A stretch of 64,000 nt of DNA from Auanema rhodensis. Lineage: Eukaryota > Animalia > Nematoda. This document shows positions 11,751-25,402 of the stretch, piece after piece. Where the stretch lies: positions 12,896,001-12,960,000 of the forward strand of contig OZ059897.1 of the NCBI GenBank assembly GCA_964057225.1, read 5' to 3'. Below the pieces are notes generated by a model. It had not been told where the DNA came from. It saw only the letters and a list, made by a program, of their open reading frames with translations, and did no database searches. Numbering within the stretch: the first letter of the stretch is position 1; every line of letters starts with the position of its first letter. A program made the translations under genes and the position numbers.

Positions 11751-12251
11751 GAAATAGAGATGAGAGTATTGTATTTGTTTAAATTTTTTCATTCTCAAAA
11801 TTATTTGCACATTTCTTATTATTTTTGAAGTTGTAATGATCATTTCCAAGCATTTCGGTTCATTCTCTTGATAAGACATTATAATTGTATGTTTTTGTGT
11901 GTTATCCTTTATGCCATGAAATTTGCTTGATTTCCGAAATCAGCAATTTACTATCATAGTTCATTTTGACTATTTTTTTGGTCATCTTTTTCGTATCAAT
12001 TTTGGACGGCAATATGACGTTGTTTGGAAATGTGTTTATTAGTTTACTTATCTTCTGGAAACATTCAATCTATTCCGATAAATTGATAGAACTAGTTGTT
12101 CCTTCGCACTAGTTGTTCGTTGTGGACTGTTTCTGTTTTGTCATGTAATCAACTCTCAAATATAAAAATATAATATTAGAAATATTTCTCTCATATTTTT
12201 TTACTCAATTAGAATACGTTTTACTATTTCGTGTTCAAATTTGATCTTCAG

Positions 12252-13408
12252 ATGACTATCAGTGGATTCCCTCTTGTTGGACTCGGAACATGGCAAAGTA
12301 AGCCAGGAGAGGTCGGTGCAGCCGTCGAAACTGCCCTTCTCAATGGATACAAACATATTGATTGCGCCTGGGTTTATGGGAATCAAAAGGAAATTGGAGT
12401 TGTTTTCCAAAAACTTTTTTCTTCGAAAATAAAGGTGATAATTTTGCCATTAACTTTATGAGAAGGAAATGAATATAATCATGAAATTTATTGTTCAGCG
12501 TGAAGATATTTTCATCACTTCCAAAATTTGGAACTCATTCCATTCATATGAAAAGTGCACCGTAAGATTAATTGATTCATCTTTTTAAAACAGTTAAATT
12601 GAAGGAAGCTGTTGATATCATCTTGGATGAATTGAAACTTGACTATATTGACCTTCTTCTTATTCATTGGCCTATGGGATATCAAGAGGGTGGTGAACCC
12701 ATTCCTAAATATCCAGGAACTGATAAGACAATCTTTTCCGACGTTGATTATCTTGATACCTGGAGAGCACTTGAAGATGCTGTCGCCGCCGGAAAAGTTC
12801 GCAACATTGGACTTTCTAACTTCAATCATAAGCAAATTCTTCGAGTTATCGAAGCAGCTAAGATCAAGCCACAAGTTCTTCAAATTGAACTTCATCCATA
12901 TTTGCAACAGAAGAAACTTCTTCAGTTCTGTAAGGAACACGATATTGTAGTGACAGCTTATTCTTCTCTTGGAAATCCTGGGTCTTCCATGTTCCGTCAA
13001 GAAGGCGATCCAAATGTTATTACTGATCCTGTCATCAATAAGATTGCTGATGCACACAAAAAGGTAGATTTTGGCTGTTTTTTCCGGGCTTGAATTACAT
13101 CTACATACTATATAGACACCAGCTCAAATTGCTCTTCGCTGGGCTGTTCAACAAGGAGTTCACGTCATCCCTAAGTCTGTTAACGTCGGTTGGTGTTTGT
13201 GTCATCTTTAATAATTGATAAGTGATGATACATATATTTCAAAAATCGAATTCCAGATCGTATCCGTTCAAATGCAGAGCTTTTCGATTTCACTCTGACT
13301 TCTGAAGAAATGGCTGAAATTGATGGTTTAGATCGTAAATTCCGCCTGATTGATTTAACCAAAACTGCTGGTGACCATCCACATTTCAGCCTTCATGAAG
13401 AGTACTGA
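12252..13408 (+). CDS. Aldo-keto reductase (AKR1-like)
   Basis: [17 protein letters not shown] (catalytic D, Y), ITSKIWN (K), LIHWP (H), IGLSNFN, AYSSLG and VIPKSV motifs; five exons. Confidence 0.95.
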
Positions 13409-13583
13409 GCTGGCAATATAATGACCAGATTGATATGGTTATTTTTATTTTTATTTTTTCTTCGAAAATAAATTATTAGCTTATAAATTTTATCAACATT
13501 TATATAAAAATATATGATAAAACTACTGTAAAAGTACATATAAAGTATACAATAATTATGCTGTCCTATACGGAAATAGAAGT

Positions 13584-14687
13584 TTATTCGGAGTAACTAT
13601 CAAACGGAAGATAATTCCAAGACCAATCTTTTATTTTATGTTCCAATCTATCCATATATAGGCCATCATTCTTGATTATCCTATAAAAATTATTTTTATA
13701 ATCCAGTAAAATATATCTAATAGGCATGAATGCACAATGTGTTGATTTTAGAATACAATACGTGGTTGCTTGGATGCCAACTTTGTATGCAAATTAACCC
13801 CCCCCCCCCCGCAAAAAAGGAATTATTTTAGATTGAAACCAGAAAAAAGCTGTAGTGTTTTCTCTCAAACAACCAATTTTTTTTCATTTTCATTAGATAT
13901 TTTACTCTTTTTTTTCTGTCAATTTTGAAATGATTTTCTGAAGTATTTTGATTTTTACCAAGTTATATTGCTGCGACTAGGGGCTTCTCTACCAAACACA
14001 TCGAATGAATTATCAAAGCCAAAAAGTCCATGAGCATCGCACCAGAAGTGGTTGTTACCTATAAATTGTATCAAGAAGAATTGAAATGTTTTGAAATGAA
14101 TTCTTAAATATTTCTTTAGAATTCCGTAAAGATTCGTATTAATAATATTTTTCCAGACAATAGTTTTGAACCTGAGCAACAACTTTTGCATAGAAGTCTA
14201 TTTCTTCTGAAGGTACTTAGGAGAAAAACATTTTTATAATTATAACTAAGATTGCAGAGAAACAATCAAGTGTGGATTGTAAGCGTTAAATGCAAATAAT
14301 GAAAAAAACGACATTTAATTCTACTTAAGTAAAGAGCAAAGGTAAAGTTTATCTCCTAATAGATAATCAAGAAAACAAACGTTTTCCAACTCCTATTTAT
14401 ACTTTTGCAAACAAAAATTTCAAATGGCTTTTTTGTTTTATAAAAAAATAAAATCACATTTGATGTAAGGTTGTTTTTGAAACGTTCTTGTGAAAAGAAA
14501 CCAAGTGAGAAATAAGAAACGGAATCTTTTGAAGCGTGTTTCTCATATGTTAAGATTTGTCTCTGATTTTTCAGAGGCACAATTCTTCTTCCTTTGTTTC
14601 AGGAAATAGAACAATATACAGATTTTGCTTTTTTGTTTCTCATGTATTGTAGTAAATACAGATATCTATATCTACATAGATACACAT

Positions 14688-14723
<36 letters not shown>

Positions 14724-17700
14724 TTATAGATATATGCATATATACAAATGTATATTATATATATATATTTATAATAAAAGCTGAAGGTCACATTCGTCAT
14801 ATTTATTATATTCGTTATATTGGGATTCAGTTATATATTATATATTAGAATAATATTTTTTTTCATCAGCAAAAACTATTTGTATGCTTGTCGTCAAGCT
14901 ATTCTCTCGACCTCAAATGGCAAGATCCTGTCAACCTAACCACGCTCTAGGCTTTTTTTCTCTTCCGCTGTATTTTCAGAACAATAATCCATTTTATATT
15001 TTAACTGACCACTTAAAAATATCGGAAAGTAAGCTTACTCCCATTTAAATAAACAAGTGTAGGGTAAAAAATATTCTACTACATACTATTTTGATAAAAA
15101 ATGTCCTGCTTTTTGCAAAATAATTCATTCCCCCCCCCCACGGCTTGGCTTCATGTGTGCAATCTTTTTGAACATGTTGATTCTCATTCAGAGTTTAAGT
15201 ATGGTGTATCTTAATGTTATCAAATATCCAAAAAGTTGATAGCATCATGAACATCTTATATTATTAATTATCATTAATTATAATAATAATTAAATCTTTT
15301 CTAAGGCATAAATTCTTGTAATTCTGTATTGCCAATAGTGTTCAGATTTCATTTCCGACATCATCATTTTACAATGAGGAAGAGGATATTTCTAAGAATT
15401 TATTATTTTTCACTAAGACTTTTCTTTTTTTTTTTTGAATCTTATTTGCCTAATTCATTTTAAAATTCCCGAAAACGAGAAATATATCAAGACTTTCAGA
15501 GCAAAAACAAAATGCGGCAGATGAAGTACAAATCCTAAACTTGGAACTAACTTACTATATGTTTTTGCTCAATTAGATATGAAGCATCTAGAACATAAGA
15601 CAAAGGTCGATTTAAATCCGAAAATTTTAGTTCCTTGATGCTGATCAGTCTCTTTCTAATATTTTATCTTGTCCTATGGTTTCATTTCGTTTGTAGCTTT
15701 GTATTATAATATATACATATGTACACATGCATGTTCAACATGTAATGAAGCATTTCAGCTTTTCAACGTAGCAAAGAATAAAAGAACTAAATAAAAATTT
15801 TTGAACTTCTCATCCGAAATTATGACGCATTGGAGAAGAAAATTTTCCGCTTGATATGCCGTTTCTTCCGTGCCAGTCTTACTCGTTCCCTCGATATCTT
15901 TATTCTATTCTTTCTCAATCGTCTCTCTCTCCCTCTTTGCGATTCTCTCATTATTGCAAACTCTTTTTTTTTCTCTTTTGAATCATTTTTCGAAATCTTT
16001 ACAATTTTCTGATTTTCCGTTTTACTCCTTCTGTCTTTTCTCGCTATATATTATACTATTATGTATTATATATGGTTATATCTATTGCCTACACTTTGCT
16101 CTCCATTCATCTTCAACTAGCTTCACTCCAGTTTCATTTTCACCTTCCTCCTTTTTCTTTAATCCATCTGCATATCTTCTTATGGATTACTTGTTACCAC
16201 AAGATAGGAATCGTTTAGTAACTACGAAAAATTCCCCACTTGACGAGGGCTGATGAATTTTAGCTTTTCTTGAACTTGTGATGGCTTCTCTTTTGGCCAA
16301 GATTAGGTATAATTCCAAAACCAATTAGCTTGGCATGAATTATCACGAATCTCCTCTTCCATCAATTTAATTTTTCCTTTTTCCTTTTAATTTTGCATCT
16401 CTTACACTATCTTTCAAAACGTTTCTGCCAACCTACCACGGTCGATGTCTAGAAAACGAAAACGGAATTGCGTGTTTGGAGCTAAGATGCGGTCACGTTG
16501 ATCGCTCAGCACAGACTGACATCTGATTCGAACGCTGGCGTCGGCCAGATTAACAACTCCAACCTAAAAAAATTCTGATTTTTTTTCATTTAAACTATAG
16601 TTTTGTTTGAAAAACTTATTTAAGTTCAAAAATTTGAAGTTAAAGCATTATCGATGCTTTCTAAAGAGGACAGGCTTCATTTTCAAGTTTTGCAATAAAG
16701 AGGGATTCGGGACAACTCCTAATTAGTCTAATATTCGTGAAAGTGAAATAAGTTATTTCATAGAATTACTAACAACACTAATGCTTTTCATGAAACTCTC
16801 AAAGGTTAATTAACTCATAACTATCTTTTACAATCATCAATTGTTCTTAATATCAATACAAAAGCATCGTTCTTGCAGAATTTTTTCATTAGAGATACTG
16901 AAATTACGAAACATATGTATATACTAACCTGCATATCTTTTACGAAAAAAAGTATGAAAGTTTAACTTTAAGCACTAAAAGTCTTTTTTCTTCCTACTAC
17001 ACTGAAACTTCACTTTCATTCAATTAAACTTTTCTGATTAAAACTAATTATTTTCTAAAAGCAAAAAAAAGGAAAAACTTTTTGTCTTCTTAAGCTATAC
17101 TTGCTACTTGTAGCAAAATAAGAAGAAATATTCTTCTTCACACAAACTCTTTATATTTCTTCTTCATCAATGATTTTAACATTTCTTTTTTTTTGTAAAA
17201 AAAAAATAATCTCTTCTCTTATTTTGTTTAGTCTTTGCAGGATACTAATACCTTATGGTTCAAATTGCATTCTAACCAAGTGACGTCATGACATATAACT
17301 CGTCGTCAATACTTTTTAGATACAGATTTACTCTTCTTCAACTTAATCAAAGAATTAACTCCAGCATATAAGCCACCTCGTTTGTATATGCTCTTCTCAT
17401 TTTATTTTTCTCTTTACTTCATTCTTCCTCTCTTATACTCTTTTCCCTCTGGTCTCTTATTTTCTCTCTTTCATTCTCTCATAATTGTAAAATCGTTCAT
17501 TACATATTTCTCAGTATCTCAATCTTCCTTTTTCAACTTCTATCATCGTATCCATGTCCATTCTTTTAGGAATTTTAAAAAAAGTAAAAGAAAGTTTTTG
17601 GAGAAAAAATTGACCGTTTTTTTGGCTTCTTTCTGTCATAATTTAATCTTTTTCAAAGATCATGAAGAGATATAGAAAAAGAAAAACTAATTGGTTTCAT

Positions 17701-19606
17701 CTACACCCACATGTCATCACTTCTTTCTCCTCATTCAGTTCACTTCCCTCTTTTACTCTGTATTAATCAACCAACTAAGCTGTCTTTACTTCCTCTAACA
17801 TATCTTCGCACACGATATCTTTGTATGAAAAGTTGAAAATGTTCAAGAAAAATTTTGAATTTTCAACAATCATAGTTTACTTCTATCTGAATGACTGAAA
17901 CTATTATGGCCATCTGGTTGCTTTTATTCAATTAACTTTTATAGTCTATTAAACTATTTTTATACATATATAAAAATATTTTTCTAGCAGTTGTGATCAA
18001 CTTTTTCTGTTTAGCCCTCATTTTCTTTTATCTGCTGTTTCCACAAAATTAAGTCATTTTTTGATCTTTTTTAGCAAGTCACTCACTACAAAGGCTAACA
18101 AAAATTTTTTTAATGAAAAGCCGTTTCATGCTCTTTTCTGGAAAACTTTTTGATAAACACATCATAAAACTTTTGTTTTAGAGTTTGTTTCATTCTCTTT
18201 ACATACATATTTATTTCATTTTTTTTTCTTATTTTTGTGGTAAACATAAAAGAATTGGTGAGAAAAATTTGATTGCAAGAAAATATAAAAGTGTCACAGT
18301 CGGCTTGTTTCATTTTTCTTTGACAAAGTTTTTTTTTTGAACGTCTTTTCAAAATACTTAATAACACAAAATCAGAAGCTTATATGGCAATGAGGTTTCA
18401 AAATTCTTTTTCTTCTCAATAACCCTGTGTATATGAATGTGTGTGCGTCTGTGTATGTGTCTCAGTAGTGCTATAATTCTGAACAGCGTTGCATGCTTCA
18501 GAAATCTTGCGTTGACACTACTTCAATTTTATCCTTTCATTTTTACATACATAAGATCAAGAAATGCTTCAACATGATTATAATGAGGTAGTGTTCATTA
18601 AACCGCACTTGAGCTTTCTTCCGTTTTCAGTTGAAGCTGTTTTTTTCATATCTCAAATCTCTTGTGGTTGCTCTCTTAGCAGATTTCTGAATACTTTTCA
18701 TTTCTTCTATATTCTACTCCGTTACTCTCTCTCTATATTTCTCTCTAGTTCTCCTCCCCCTCCCTCTCTTTCTATCTCTCTCTCTCTCTCTCTCTCACCA
18801 CAATCTCTATCTTCTTCAGACAATAAAGGTTACATCTTTTAGATCTTACGGATTGTTCTTCATTATTCAATTTTGAAATTGTTTAGAAGCTGCTCTTCCC
18901 AACATTAGCATATAAATTGACGTCATTACAAGATTCCGATTTAAATTCGTTAGTAAACGAGATTTAATCACATGAGAATAGTATACGTTCCAAATTTCAG
19001 CTTTCATTTTTCAGTAATTGCCCCCCCCCCCCCCCCCAGTCTTCTATCTCTCGACTCTCAAAAGTTATGTTTTTAAAGTTTTTCGATAGCAATAAACTAT
19101 GCTTTACTGAACAATTAGATTTTTTCAAATATTCTTAGCAACAGAGTTTCTCTATGAGTTCCTTCATGGTAAATCTTCAAGCTCATAATCGTCAAACGTC
19201 TTGATGATCAGAAGAGCAAAAGATAAGTTAATTTGCTCACTTCTCACTGAATCTCATACAGATGTCATCGTCAACATCAAACTCCTCATGTGTAATCACC
19301 ATACTGAATAAGTTTCATTTTTCGTGAGACGAATGACCAAAGTTAAGTGAAAGTCTTGTTTTCATTTCAAACTGACTGACTTTTCTCTATCTTTACATTT
19401 CTTTATCCTTGTGTTCTTTTTCGTAAGAATTGATTAAAAATCTTTAAAAACCTAATTTTTGATTTCCTAATTGGATTTCAAGACTTGAAAATTTGAAATT
19501 ATCTTTCATACTAACTAATTAAGGAAGAACCAACCTCAGCTGGACGACGATGCTTACGGGCTAAGCATATTAGCGCCATATACCATAGTATTATTGCAAA
19601 TTTCAT
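13584..19606 (-). CDS. Secreted 131-aa protein resembling plant self-incompatibility S1 / SPH proteins; 4 exons (19606-19535, 16563-16437, 14058-13959, 13680-13584)
   Basis: All junctions are GT-AG and phase-consistent. Protein: MKFAIILWYMALICLARKHRRPAEVGVVNLADASVRIRCQSVLSDQRDRILAPNTQFRFRFLDIDRGNNHFWCDAHGLFGFDNSFDVFGREAPSRSNITWIIKNDGLYMDRLEHKIKDWSWNYLPFDSYSE*. It carries the SPH pattern V-x-N-L..C-x-S..D..L..F-x-F-x-F..FWC..FDVF..W-xxxx-DG-x-Y..W. Confidence 0.8.
13798..13810. repeat. C13 homopolymer (G-tract on the sense strand of the SPH-like gene, intron 3)
   Basis: 13 consecutive C. Confidence 0.95.
15130..15139. repeat. C10 homopolymer (SPH-like gene, intron 2)
   Basis: 10 consecutive C. 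Confidence 0.95.
19021..19037. repeat. C17 homopolymer, G-quadruplex-capable on the minus strand (SPH-like gene, intron 1)
   Basis: 17 consecutive C. Confidence 0.95.
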
Positions 19607-21825
19607 ACTCCTATCTTTCCTAACGTCCGTTGTCCTAAAAATCAGTAAAAATCAATCCTATTAATACTATTTACTCCATTATTTTCATTCTACTAGAAAT
19701 TTTCACACTATATGTAATGCATTAATTAAAAATTTGTAAATAAATAGATCGGGGCAAAATGAAAAAGAATATTATTAAAGTTCAAAGCAGCTGCTAGACG
19801 AAAACAATTTTTTTTAACTTAAAATTATTTGATTTACCTAATTTTCGTATATTTGTATCTTGTTACATATGTCATCCAGATTCAGATTTTACTGCTTATA
19901 AGTATTCATTTTTCTATATTTGTTCAAAAGTTATTTAGTTGTATGTTTTTCTTTTTCTTTTCTTTCTTTTTTTTTTGTTAACGCATTTGTTACTTTGACT
20001 TGGTGTAACAGCGTGAAGAAGCTTTATATCTGAGCTATGTCTCATCAAAGATATAATATGTTATATAAGCTAAATCAAAATCATTCATCTACAATACTAC
20101 CATATTCAGAATATATCAAAGAATCATTCACGTGCAATTCAAATAAATCGTTGAAGCACGTGAACATTAAATGGCTTTGTCATATTCATGAAATTGTTGA
20201 TTCAGAGAGCGGTTGTGCTTAGTTAATTCCTATTTTTAAAATTCATTTTCTCACGTCACTTCAGGATTTAAAGTTTTATTTTAAATCTTTGTTAAAGCAC
20301 TCCAAAAGATCTCTCATAATTTTAACTTCAACAAAAATCTAAAATTCAAACCTTTATATTGAGTTAAAACATTGTTTTGTCAAAAATATATCAAAACTAT
20401 ACCAGATCGTTATTTTAATTTTTTGAAACATTTTACTCTTTTCAACAAACGAAAAAATAAGAGAAAATGCATAATTAATGCGGCTATTAGCTGCTGTTTG
20501 TTCATTTCTGTTTAATTTCCCTTTAGACAAGATATTTTTTCTAATTATTTAGGCAAATCAAATTGTGAACTTTTTCAAAAAGGAAATATTCGTCATAAAA
20601 AATCTTAATGTTTTATATCGCTGATTCAAGTTATGCGGATTGAAGGAAAAGAGAATGAAGGATTATGCTGAAAGAGAGACTAGAATTTCAAAGATTCATC
20701 TGATATTGCAATCTATTCAATTGACTTTAATTACTTTCATTCGCAATATATTTTAAGAAAACAATGGCTTTCTGTGTCTGAAGAGCAATACGAAAAGAAA
20801 CAATGGAAGTTAAAATATATGCTTAGTGACGGACGAAATTTATTTTTTTGAAAAATGAAAAAAGGGTGAGAAAGCCCAATGGTTAGCTTTGTCCTAGAAT
20901 GAAAAACGAAAATCAAATTGTTGTATCATCTTAAAGAATATTCTGTTGGGAAAATAAAATTTATAGTGATGCTGCATACAAATTATGAGCTATATCCATA
21001 ACTATATGTGCTATGTTTCAAAGACTTTTGAAATAGTTTAAATCATATTTTTTGAAAATAATTTGAAAAGAAACACAGATGAATCGGTTAATGTACTTTG
21101 TGTGACCTCATGCTAATTCAAGAAACATAAAACTAAGCTTTTTGAAAATAACAGGAAATTACGATCAGCAAATTAGCTAAGAATTTTTGAATAAAATGGA
21201 AGAATTTAGAACATAAATGAAAATTTAAAATAGTCTAACAGACTTTAATATTTTATTACAAGCTAAGCTACTGTATATTTTATAAAAATGATTTCTCGTA
21301 TAAACTATAGCATATGCACATATACTACTACTATTATCTCTCTTCAACTTTGTGTTCTTTCAAGATATTCTCCTGTTCTTCCAGATGTCTCTTTCTCTCT
21401 TATTCTCATCCCTTTCTGTGAATCCGAAGAAAACTTTCCGGTCAACAGAACTTAGATGAAATGAATAACTGCGCATTCGTAAAATATCAGATAAATTCAT
21501 TAAAGCTCAGCTAAATATTTTCCAAAAAAATGATGAAACCCAACATCAATGCCAACTAGAAAGTTGTAAAAAAATATTTTTTTTTAAGAACGCAAGAAGT
21601 TCTAATGCATGATGCTTTTTTTCGTCGACAATTATCTTCTTAAACATTAGAATGGCATATTCCGACAGATTGTCAACGCCTACATGTCTCAAATTGAGAG
21701 ATGATTTGAGATATTTTGTCAAAATCCATTTTACGTACTACTTTACCATATTAAGCTTTTCCCTTGATTGGCCTGACTTGGGCTCTAAAGTTCTTTTACT
21801 TGATTTGAACTTTGGGATACTTCGT

Positions 21826-24965: not shown

Positions 24966-25402
24966 TCATTGAATAATATTATATAAGACTCGTTGTCGAA
25001 GTTGTAATGCCGAAGGAACTGATGATGATGCTGATGATGATGATGATGATGAAGATGCAACTATAATATAAATATTTAAAATATTTTGGAATTATATGTT
25101 GGGATATATACAAATAGTTAATTTAATTAGCTTACGGTCATTTTCTGGTCTTTTATCTCGAGATTCTACTAGACTTCTCAGAATTCTAAACATCCGCCAG
25201 ATTGAGTAATCAGGTCGAATAGCCGCCATATGACTCCGCAAGCTGGAAATACTTCTATAGTTTTCGAAGTTCCACAAGAATAATTAATATAGAGTTCCAT
25301 ATATGCTAACCTGTTCACTCCATCCGGTGGTAGAACAGCATAAGTATCATCAGCTAAACATACTGATGCAAAAACTAGCAGCAAACATAAAATAATTCTC
25401 AT
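24966..25402 (-). CDS. 97-aa secreted, neuropeptide-precursor-like protein; 3 exons (25402-25311, 25242-25136, 25060-24966)
   Basis: TTTTAG directly before the ATG. Protein: MRIILCLLLVFASVCLADDTYAVLPPDGVNSLRSHMAAIRPDYSIWRMFRILRSLVESRDKRPENDLASSSSSSSASSSVPSALQLRQRVLYNIIQ*. Has a signal peptide and a KR site. Confidence 0.7.

What the first reader, a model, noticed from the sequence alone, without database searches (positions are those of the whole stretch)
13584..19606. Hidden nematode gene for a plant self-incompatibility (S1/SPH)-like secreted protein
Seen: four small exons over 6 kb, of which only exon 3 appears in the ORF track. They splice in phase into a 131-aa signal-peptide protein with ordered motifs V-V-N-L, RCQS..D..L..FRFRF, FWC, FDVF, W-IIKN-DGLY and a late W. 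Known: this is the pattern of the Self-incomp_S1/SPH family (Pfam PF05938; Papaver PrsS and Arabidopsis SPH proteins), small beta-sandwich secreted ligands best known from dicots. Inference: a nematode SPH-fold ligand, from ancient horizontal transfer or patchy retention, now carrying nematode-type introns. Only two Cys remain in the mature part. I cannot tell whether nematode members are already catalogued.
Basis: partly seen in the sequence, partly recalled or inferred. Interest (0 to 1): 0.9.

Follow-up and report, generated by a model that had tools for sequence, protein, structure and literature searches.

The report
Nematode S-protein homolog gene (K07D4.5 orthologue)
The four exons are a real, conserved nematode gene for a small secreted protein of the plant "self-incompatibility S1/SPH" family, but such genes are already catalogued in nematodes, including C. 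elegans K07D4.5, so this is an ordinary orthologue of unknown function.

Summary
Four minus-strand exons (19606-19535, 16563-16437, 14058-13959, 13680-13584) with GT..AG introns splice in frame into a 131-aa protein with a signal peptide.

The family assignment also holds. The spliced product aligns over residues 17-130 with proteins that UniProt names "S-protein homolog" in hookworms, Nippostrongylus, Caenorhabditis (C. elegans K07D4.5), Diploscapter, Mesorhabditis, Panagrolaimus and Pristionchus. Identity is 51-61% to most of them and 37-47% to the three most divergent genera. A profile of these orthologues scores it 189 bits, against 8 bits for the best shuffle.

What does not hold is the novelty. 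Nematode PF05938 members are in Pfam and UniProt, and a 2017 paper notes them. The horizontal-transfer idea could not be tested, because no plant sequences were fetched.

The whole spliced protein was never scanned against Pfam, because it has no reference.

Verdict: real gene, new member of a known kind, low interest.

The parts
19535..19606 (-). Coding exon 1: start codon, hydrophobic signal peptide (residues 1-16) and the polybasic R-K-H-R-R stretch. It ends in phase 0 after ...P-A-E.
   Evidence: mean Kyte-Doolittle 2.09 for residues 2-16. The R-K-H-R-R-P-x-E stretch is nearly identical in the Mesorhabditis orthologue and conserved in all orthologues. C. elegans K07D4.5 has an intron at the same position.
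16564..19534 (-). Intron 1 (2971 nt, GT..AG, 30% GC).
   Evidence: No Rfam family here. No DNA conservation with the A. ceylanicum, C. angaria or C. elegans loci.
16437..16563 (-). Coding exon 2 (residues 25-66 plus the first base of Gly67). It encodes the first strands of the SPH domain, including V-V-N-L and R-C-Q-S.
   Evidence: PF05938 E 0.18, 12.8 bits, for this exon alone. phmmer against 1.84 billion proteins gave 7 hits, all nematode where named; the best is 76% identical. tblastn finds it 73% identical in the A. ceylanicum locus L001.
14059..16436 (-). Intron 2 (2378 nt, phase 1). It contains an AT-rich microsatellite.
13959..14058 (-). Coding exon 3 (rest of Gly67 to the first two bases of Trp100). 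It holds H-F-W-C-D-A, F-D-V-F-G and the N-I-T sequon.
   Evidence: 76% identical to A. ceylanicum exon 3 at L001:12647-12748. 79% DNA identity to the C. angaria exon. Aligned.
13681..13958 (-). Intron 3 (278 nt, phase 2, splitting the invariant Trp codon).
   Evidence: C. elegans K07D4.5 has the same position and phase.
13584..13680 (-). Coding exon 4 with the TAA stop (13584-13586). It holds K-N-D-G-L-Y and the C-terminal W-x-W-N-Y-x-P-F motif.
   Evidence: Aligns with the C-termini of the Diploscapter, Caenorhabditis and strongylid orthologues.
19635..19640 (-). TTTTAG, 28 nt upstream of the ATG. It is a possible trans-splice acceptor or 5' end of the mature mRNA (inference only).
   Evidence: Pattern found. 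No RNA data.
13444..13455 (-). Two overlapping-in-series AATAAA hexamers about 130 nt after the stop. They are candidate polyadenylation signals (inference only).

Best explanation
This is an intact, selectively maintained protein-coding gene. It is the orthologue of C. elegans K07D4.5, the single-copy rhabditid 'S-protein homolog' group and the nematode branch of Pfam family PF05938 (Self-incomp_S1/SPH).

Shown:
- The exon structure and the full-length homology.
- Intron positions shared with C. elegans.
- The PF05938 hit and the SPH15-like beta-sandwich fold of the orthologues.

Inferred mechanism:
- The 131-aa precursor enters the secretory pathway and loses a signal peptide of about 16 residues.
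- This exposes a conserved polybasic stretch (R-K-H-R-R). It is either a proprotein-convertase site or a charged N-terminal tail.
- The rest folds into one beta-sandwich of about 105 residues.
- That domain is probably held by a single disulphide (Cys39-Cys73) and N-glycosylated at the conserved N-x-T before the invariant Trp.
- It acts outside the cell as a small binding protein. By analogy with Papaver PrsS and other plant SPHs, it would be a ligand for a membrane protein. Its partner and biological role in nematodes are unknown.
For: Gene model:
- GT..AG introns and an open 396-nt CDS.

Orthology:
- blastp of the spliced product gives 61-62% identity to the A. ceylanicum, N. americanus and N. 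brasiliensis proteins. It gives 51-55% to the Caenorhabditis and Diploscapter proteins. The alignments cover residues 17-130.
- An HMM built from 15 nematode orthologues without the window scores it 189 bits, E 3e-58. The best of 200 shuffles scores 8.1 bits.
- All three intron positions and phases match C. elegans K07D4.5.

Selection:
- Against A. ceylanicum exons 2-3, the non-synonymous proportion is 0.17, while synonymous sites are saturated at about 1.0.

Family:
- Exon 2 alone hits PF05938, E 0.18.
- Orthologues score 27.7, 35.5 and 35.8 bits against the cut-off of 24.
- All 16 orthologues hit PF05938 and no other family, best E 5e-13.
- Language-model features of the Nippostrongylus orthologue: 37 of 40 nearest clusters are plant PF05938 clusters, score 0.94.

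Fold:
- AlphaFold model of the N. brasiliensis orthologue (62% identical): pLDDT 88.

Cataloguing:
- UniProt and NCBI names; PMC5297725.
Against: - The window's own full spliced protein was never scanned against Pfam or folded, because it has no reference. Family and fold membership therefore rest on orthologues 37-62% identical, plus the weak exon 2 hit.
- The nematode profile does not reach the SPH15 sequence in the PDB at E <= 10.
- Only two Cys are present in the mature part. From memory, plant SPHs have four conserved Cys.
- Secretion, processing, the disulphide, glycosylation and the ligand role are all inferences.
Confidence: 0.9

Rival explanations
1. The nematode SPH genes descend from a horizontal transfer between plants and an ancestor of rhabditid nematodes. 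The three introns were gained afterwards.
For: A 2017 survey reports the family only from plants and some nematodes. All large PF05938 clusters near the orthologue in the ESM Atlas are from Streptophyta.
Against: - The gene is single-copy, has three introns at fixed positions from Caenorhabditis to strongylids, and occurs in both clade V and clade IV (Panagrolaimus). Any transfer would therefore be very old.
- Similarity to plants is remote: 14% identity to SPH15 in the structural alignment, and no sequence-level PDB hit.
- No tree with plant sequences could be built here.
- The searches used could not establish absence from other animals.
Confidence: 0.15
2. It is a nematode transthyretin-like (TTR-52/PF01060-type) beta-sandwich protein. 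The SPH motifs are a chance resemblance.
For: Transthyretins appear among the Foldseek hits (TM 0.30-0.36). Small secreted beta-sandwiches are common in nematodes.
Confidence: 0.02
3. The exons are a decaying pseudogene or a chance assembly of short ORFs, not an expressed gene.
For: No RNA evidence was obtained for this genome. No protein identical to the product was returned from the protein collection.
Against: The reading frame is intact across four exons with canonical splice sites. Non-synonymous change is about six-fold rarer than synonymous change. All four exon products are conserved with orthologues, including the invariant Trp codon split by intron 3.
Confidence: 0.03
4. It works as a membrane-binding module like domain 4 of the cholesterol-dependent cytolysins, docking on lipid or glycan surfaces, rather than as a receptor ligand.
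Against: Sequence identity is only 4-10%. The cytolysin lipid-recognition motifs were not examined. A shared beta-sandwich topology says little about function, as the notes to one search point out.
Confidence: 0.08

Closest known systems
C. elegans K07D4.5 (UniProt O76574, 'S-protein homolog') and its rhabditid orthologues, for example A. ceylanicum Y032_0494g2443, N. americanus RB195_020173 and N. brasiliensis A0A0N4Y693
   Same: - Full-length alignment at 51-62% identity.
- Same size, signal peptide and polybasic stretch.
- The same two Cys, the N-x-T-W sequon and the C-terminal W-x-W-x-Y-P motif.
- The same three intron positions and phases.
- Unusually long introns for so small a gene.
   Different: - The window protein lacks the roughly 15-residue C-terminal tail seen in most Caenorhabditis members.
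- It has a comparatively long branch in the gene tree.
- No protein identical to it was returned from the collection.
Plant SPH / S-protein homologues (Pfam PF05938): Papaver rhoeas PrsS and Arabidopsis SPH15 (PDB 6g7g)
   Same: - The orthologues pass the PF05938 cut-off.
- Both are small secreted single-domain proteins.
   Different: - About 14% identity in the structural alignment.
- Two Cys in the mature protein. From memory, plant members have four conserved Cys.
- Nematode-specific polybasic N-terminus, glycosylation sequon and C-terminal motif.
- Single-copy with three introns. From memory, plant SPHs form large, mostly one- or two-exon gene families.
- No known receptor or role in nematodes.
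Nematode hevein-domain proteins carrying a PF05938 domain (Bauters et al. 2017, PMC5297725)
   Same: The same Pfam domain in nematodes.
   Different: Those are multi-domain proteins with chitin-binding modules. This one is a stand-alone domain. They were not examined here.
Domain 4 of cholesterol-dependent cytolysins, and C. elegans PUD-1/PUD-2
   Different: No sequence similarity and no Pfam hit. Fewer residues align for the cytolysins, and the rmsd is higher for PUD. The resemblance is in fold only.

Membership tests
Pfam PF05938 Self-incomp_S1 (SPH) | The whole protein scores at or above the curated cut-off (24 bits) against the family HMM | tested here: inconclusive
   The spliced window protein has no reference and was not typed in, so only pieces were scanned. 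Exon 2 gives 12.8 bits, E 0.18, on profile positions 11-41. Exons 3 and 4 alone give nothing. The three orthologues whose scores were returned pass: 27.7, 35.5 and 35.8 bits. All 16 orthologues match at E <= 0.01.
Pfam PF05938 Self-incomp_S1 (SPH) | SPH15-type beta-sandwich fold | tested here: met
Pfam PF05938 Self-incomp_S1 (SPH) | Small secreted protein: N-terminal signal peptide and a single domain of about 100-120 residues | tested here: met
   131 aa. Residues 2-16 are hydrophobic, mean Kyte-Doolittle 2.09. The N-terminal helix 4-23 precedes the sandwich in the orthologue model. No signal-peptide predictor was available.
Plant SPH subgroup (PrsS/SPH15 type) | Four conserved Cys forming two disulphides (feature recalled from the literature, not from a tool) | tested here: not met
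   The mature part has only Cys39 and Cys73. The same two are the only Cys conserved in all nematode orthologues. I therefore file it in the Pfam family as a separate nematode subgroup, not as a plant-type SPH.
Rhabditid 'S-protein homolog' orthologue group (C. elegans K07D4.5) | Full-length homology to the group's members | tested here: met
   189 bits, E 3e-58, against a profile built without the window. 51-62% identity over residues 17-130.
Rhabditid 'S-protein homolog' orthologue group (C. elegans K07D4.5) | Shared gene structure: three introns after ...N-E (phase 0), within the Gly codon after D-R (phase 1) and within the invariant Trp codon (phase 2) | tested here: met
   Exon ends were mapped in C. 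elegans locus L003 and compared with the window. The A. ceylanicum exon 2 and 3 ends agree.
Nematode transthyretin-like family (PF01060) | Pfam hit and a transthyretin-type fold as the best match | tested here: not met

The most novel reading that the evidence does not exclude
The rhabditid S-protein homologs could be the animal end of an ancient plant-nematode gene transfer, or the relic of a much older eukaryotic SPH family. They could act as processed, glycosylated extracellular signals with a dedicated and still unknown membrane receptor, as PrsS acts on PrpS in poppy. The strictly conserved polybasic site after the signal peptide would then be a maturation step absent from the plant proteins.
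Probability: 0.12. Interest if true: 0.55.

Novelty: new member of a known kind. Interest (0 to 1): 0.2.

Why it matters
For this genome it adds one correct gene model. The gene is easy to miss: a 396-nt CDS spread over 6 kb, with three of its four exons too short for an ORF list.

Several deposited strongylid models of the same gene are visibly wrong. They have exon 2 right and then read into intron or foreign sequence, so the corrected structure is useful for re-annotation.

Biologically, a plant-type SPH domain kept as a conserved single-copy gene across rhabditid nematodes is a real curiosity, and its function is unknown. But it is already recorded in Pfam and UniProt and noted in the literature. 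Nothing here brings that function or the family's origin closer to an answer.

Tried and rejected
1. Word-based protein search with the 78-aa ORF around exon 3 found no candidate. The length window and exact-word requirement, not absence of relatives, explain the blank.
2. ESM Atlas search with exon 2 alone gave only weak bacterial 'hypothetical' clusters at 0.85 or below, which is uninformative for a 42-aa fragment.
4. Profile searches of the PDB by sequence (A1, A2) did not reach SPH15. The top hits, a methyltransferase and a BBE-like enzyme at E 0.05-0.4, are noise.
5. The transthyretin-like, PUD-1/2 and cytolysin domain 4 readings were considered from the fold lists. They were rejected as family assignments.
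6. I looked for something hidden in the long introns. There is no Rfam family, and no DNA conservation outside exons 2 and 3 with the A. ceylanicum, C. angaria or C. elegans loci. The intron ORFs are short and of low complexity.
7. Exon 4 of A. ceylanicum was not found in locus L001, an older assembly. It is present in the protein from the other assembly, P0016.
8. Paper searches for K07D4.5 found nothing. The SPH15 structure paper is not held.
9. The gene tree is too poorly resolved to place the window's species. It falls, unresolved, among the strongylid sequences.
10. I did not type the 131-aa spliced product into Pfam, structure-prediction or other tools, because it has no reference.
Full report
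**1. The observation**

Read on the minus strand, the window holds four short coding pieces at 19606-19535, 16563-16437, 14058-13959 and 13680-13584.
- Each intron starts with GT and ends in a T-rich tract plus AG.
- The intron phases are 0, 1 and 2.
- The joined CDS is 396 nt, open throughout, and gives 131 aa.
- Of the four pieces, only exon 3 lies in an ORF long enough (78 aa, 13955-14191) for a 60-aa ORF list.
- The product starts with a hydrophobic 16-residue leader, followed by R-K-H-R-R. It has Cys at 14, 39 and 73 and one N-x-T sequon at residue 97.

**2. Is it a gene?**

I could not hand the spliced product to the tools by reference, so I searched its pieces. Exon 2 (42 aa) was run against 1.84 billion representative proteins and gave seven hits, all nematode where a name was given. 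The best is 76% identical.

Five of the seven are plainly broken gene models. They carry exon 2 and then unrelated sequence. The other two, from Diploscapter pachys and Mesorhabditis belari, are full-length and match the window's model from the polybasic stretch to the C-terminus.

A profile of these plus the window's exon pieces (A1) then recovered the whole orthologue group:
- C. elegans K07D4.5 (O76574) and five other Caenorhabditis species.
- Ancylostoma ceylanicum, Necator americanus, Nippostrongylus brasiliensis and Cylicostephanus/Cylicocyclus.
- Mesorhabditis, Panagrolaimus and Pristionchus.

Nearly all are named 'S-protein homolog' by UniProt and carry a precomputed PF05938 hit.

Several results show that the window's model is a maintained gene:
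- In a script, the spliced product is 61-62% identical to the hookworm and Nippostrongylus proteins and 51-55% to the Caenorhabditis and Diploscapter ones. The alignments cover residues 17-130, that is, all of exons 2-4 and the end of exon 1.
- A profile built from 15 orthologues without any window sequence scores it 189 bits, E 3e-58. The best of 200 shuffles scores 8.1 bits.
- The three introns sit at exactly the same codon positions and phases as in C. elegans K07D4.5. That gene is also stretched over about 5 kb, with introns of roughly 1.8, 2.0 and 0.9 kb.
- Against A. ceylanicum exons 2-3, synonymous sites are saturated while only 17% of non-synonymous sites differ.
- At the DNA level only exons are conserved with the other species' loci. 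The introns hold no Rfam family.

It is therefore an intact gene under purifying selection.

**3. What family?**
- Exon 2 alone gives a weak direct hit to PF05938: 12.8 bits, E 0.18, profile positions 11-41.
- The orthologues whose scores were returned pass the curated cut-off of 24 bits, at 27.7, 35.5 and 35.8 bits.
- All 16 near-full-length orthologues match PF05938 at E <= 0.01 (best 5e-13). None matches any other family.
- Language-model features of the Nippostrongylus orthologue point the same way. 37 of the 40 nearest clusters are plant PF05938 clusters, score 0.94 with 221 of 256 features shared.

An AlphaFold model of that orthologue, built with alignment A2, is confident: pLDDT 88, pTM 0.73, a leader helix and then nine strands.
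- In Foldseek, SPH15 (6g7g) ranks only 13th by E-value. It nevertheless has by far the best TM-scores, 0.56/0.66, with rmsd 3.7 over 114 columns.

The margin over other beta-sandwiches is modest, and the nematode profile does not reach the SPH15 sequence in the PDB. The plant-nematode link is therefore remote. Sequence profile, language-model features and fold nonetheless all agree on it.

**4. How it probably works**

Shown: it is a small single-domain SPH-fold protein with an N-terminal hydrophobic leader.

Inferred from the alignment:
- The leader is removed after about residue 16.
- This exposes a polybasic stretch (R-K-H/Y-R-R/K, then x-N/T-E) that is conserved from Panagrolaimus to Caenorhabditis. 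It has the form of a proprotein-convertase site, but could equally be a charged tail.
- Two Cys are conserved in every member and probably form one disulphide. I had no coordinates to check this.
- An N-x-T sequon directly before the invariant Trp is kept in 14 of 16 orthologues, which fits passage through the secretory pathway.
- A C-terminal W-x-W-x-Y-P-P motif is specific to the nematode proteins.

I commit to an extracellular binding protein at about 85% probability. By analogy with PrsS/PrpS in poppy and other plant SPHs (PMC13033167), a ligand for a membrane protein is the most likely role, at about 35-40%. A lipid- or glycan-surface binder of the cytolysin domain 4 type is the main rival. 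No functional data on K07D4.5 were found.

**5. Comparison with what is known, and novelty**

They are.
- Pfam and UniProt annotate them.
- C. elegans has a RefSeq entry (NP_494709.3).
- Bauters et al. [quoted passage not shown]

The window's gene is thus an orthologue in a known group. No protein identical to its product was returned from the collection, so it may be unannotated in its own genome. Many strongylid models of the same gene are wrong.

It differs from plant SPHs in several ways:
- It has two Cys in the mature part. My memory of the plant literature is that plant SPHs have four conserved Cys; no tool result here shows this.
- It has the polybasic N-terminus, the sequon and the C-terminal motif.
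- It is single-copy and has three introns.

I file it in PF05938 as a member of the nematode subgroup, not as a plant-type SPH.

**6. Origin**

Fixed intron positions, single-copy status, presence in clades V and IV, and a gene tree broadly in line with the species tree (poorly resolved) show vertical descent within Rhabditida since their common ancestor.

Whether the family reached that ancestor by transfer from plants or by descent with loss elsewhere could not be tested. I could fetch no plant sequences, and my searches cannot show absence from other animals.

**7. Limits**
- The window's full product was never scanned against Pfam or folded, because it has no reference.
- The three listed runs hold about 5% of the sampled words. 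This is close to the exons' 6.6% share of the stretch, but without laying them it means nothing.
- The species was not identified. The protein sits with, but outside any resolved group of, strongylid sequences. The window is 30% G+C.

**Verdict**

The claimed novelty is not. This is an ordinary orthologue of a catalogued but functionally unstudied nematode gene.

Noticed in passing
Proteins P0001, P0003, P0004, P0005/P0008, P0023, P0026 (A. ceylanicum ANCCEY_03334, T. colubriformis, A. costaricensis, H. polygyrus, C. nassatus, A. caninum): Deposited strongylid models of this gene carry exon 2 correctly. They then run into unrelated sequence or stop early. One is fused to a reverse-transcriptase model. 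The long introns are the likely cause.
   Followed up: partly
L003:10001-15076 (C. elegans chromosome II, K07D4.5): The C. elegans orthologue spans about 5 kb for 150 aa, with introns of about 1.8, 2.0 and 0.9 kb. That is unusually long for C. elegans. No conserved intronic sequence with the window was detected.
   Followed up: partly
P0011 (Diploscapter pachys isoform F): This isoform has a 14-residue insertion exactly at the intron 2 position (between D-R and G-N). It is probably an alternative donor or a retained piece of intron.
   Followed up: no
window 12231-12458 and 12572-13090 (+): These are two exons of an aldo/keto reductase gene (PF00248; 25.7 and 101.7 bits). The gene converges on the 3' end of the SPH gene.
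   Followed up: partly
window 25178-25402 (-): A 74-aa ORF with a signal-peptide-like start and no Pfam hit. It is one of the other small secreted-protein candidates noted by the scan (s1-397738).
   Followed up: no
window about 19021-19036, 15131-15140 and 13801-13812; 18780-18800; 14690-14770: The introns hold long homopolymer G runs (10-16 nt), a GA microsatellite and a long TA-rich microsatellite.
   Followed up: no
   Followed up: no
runs X1-X3 (organism A): Three small runs of the same species label each hold about 5% of the sampled words of the 6-kb stretch. That is similar to the exons' share (6.6%).
   Followed up: no
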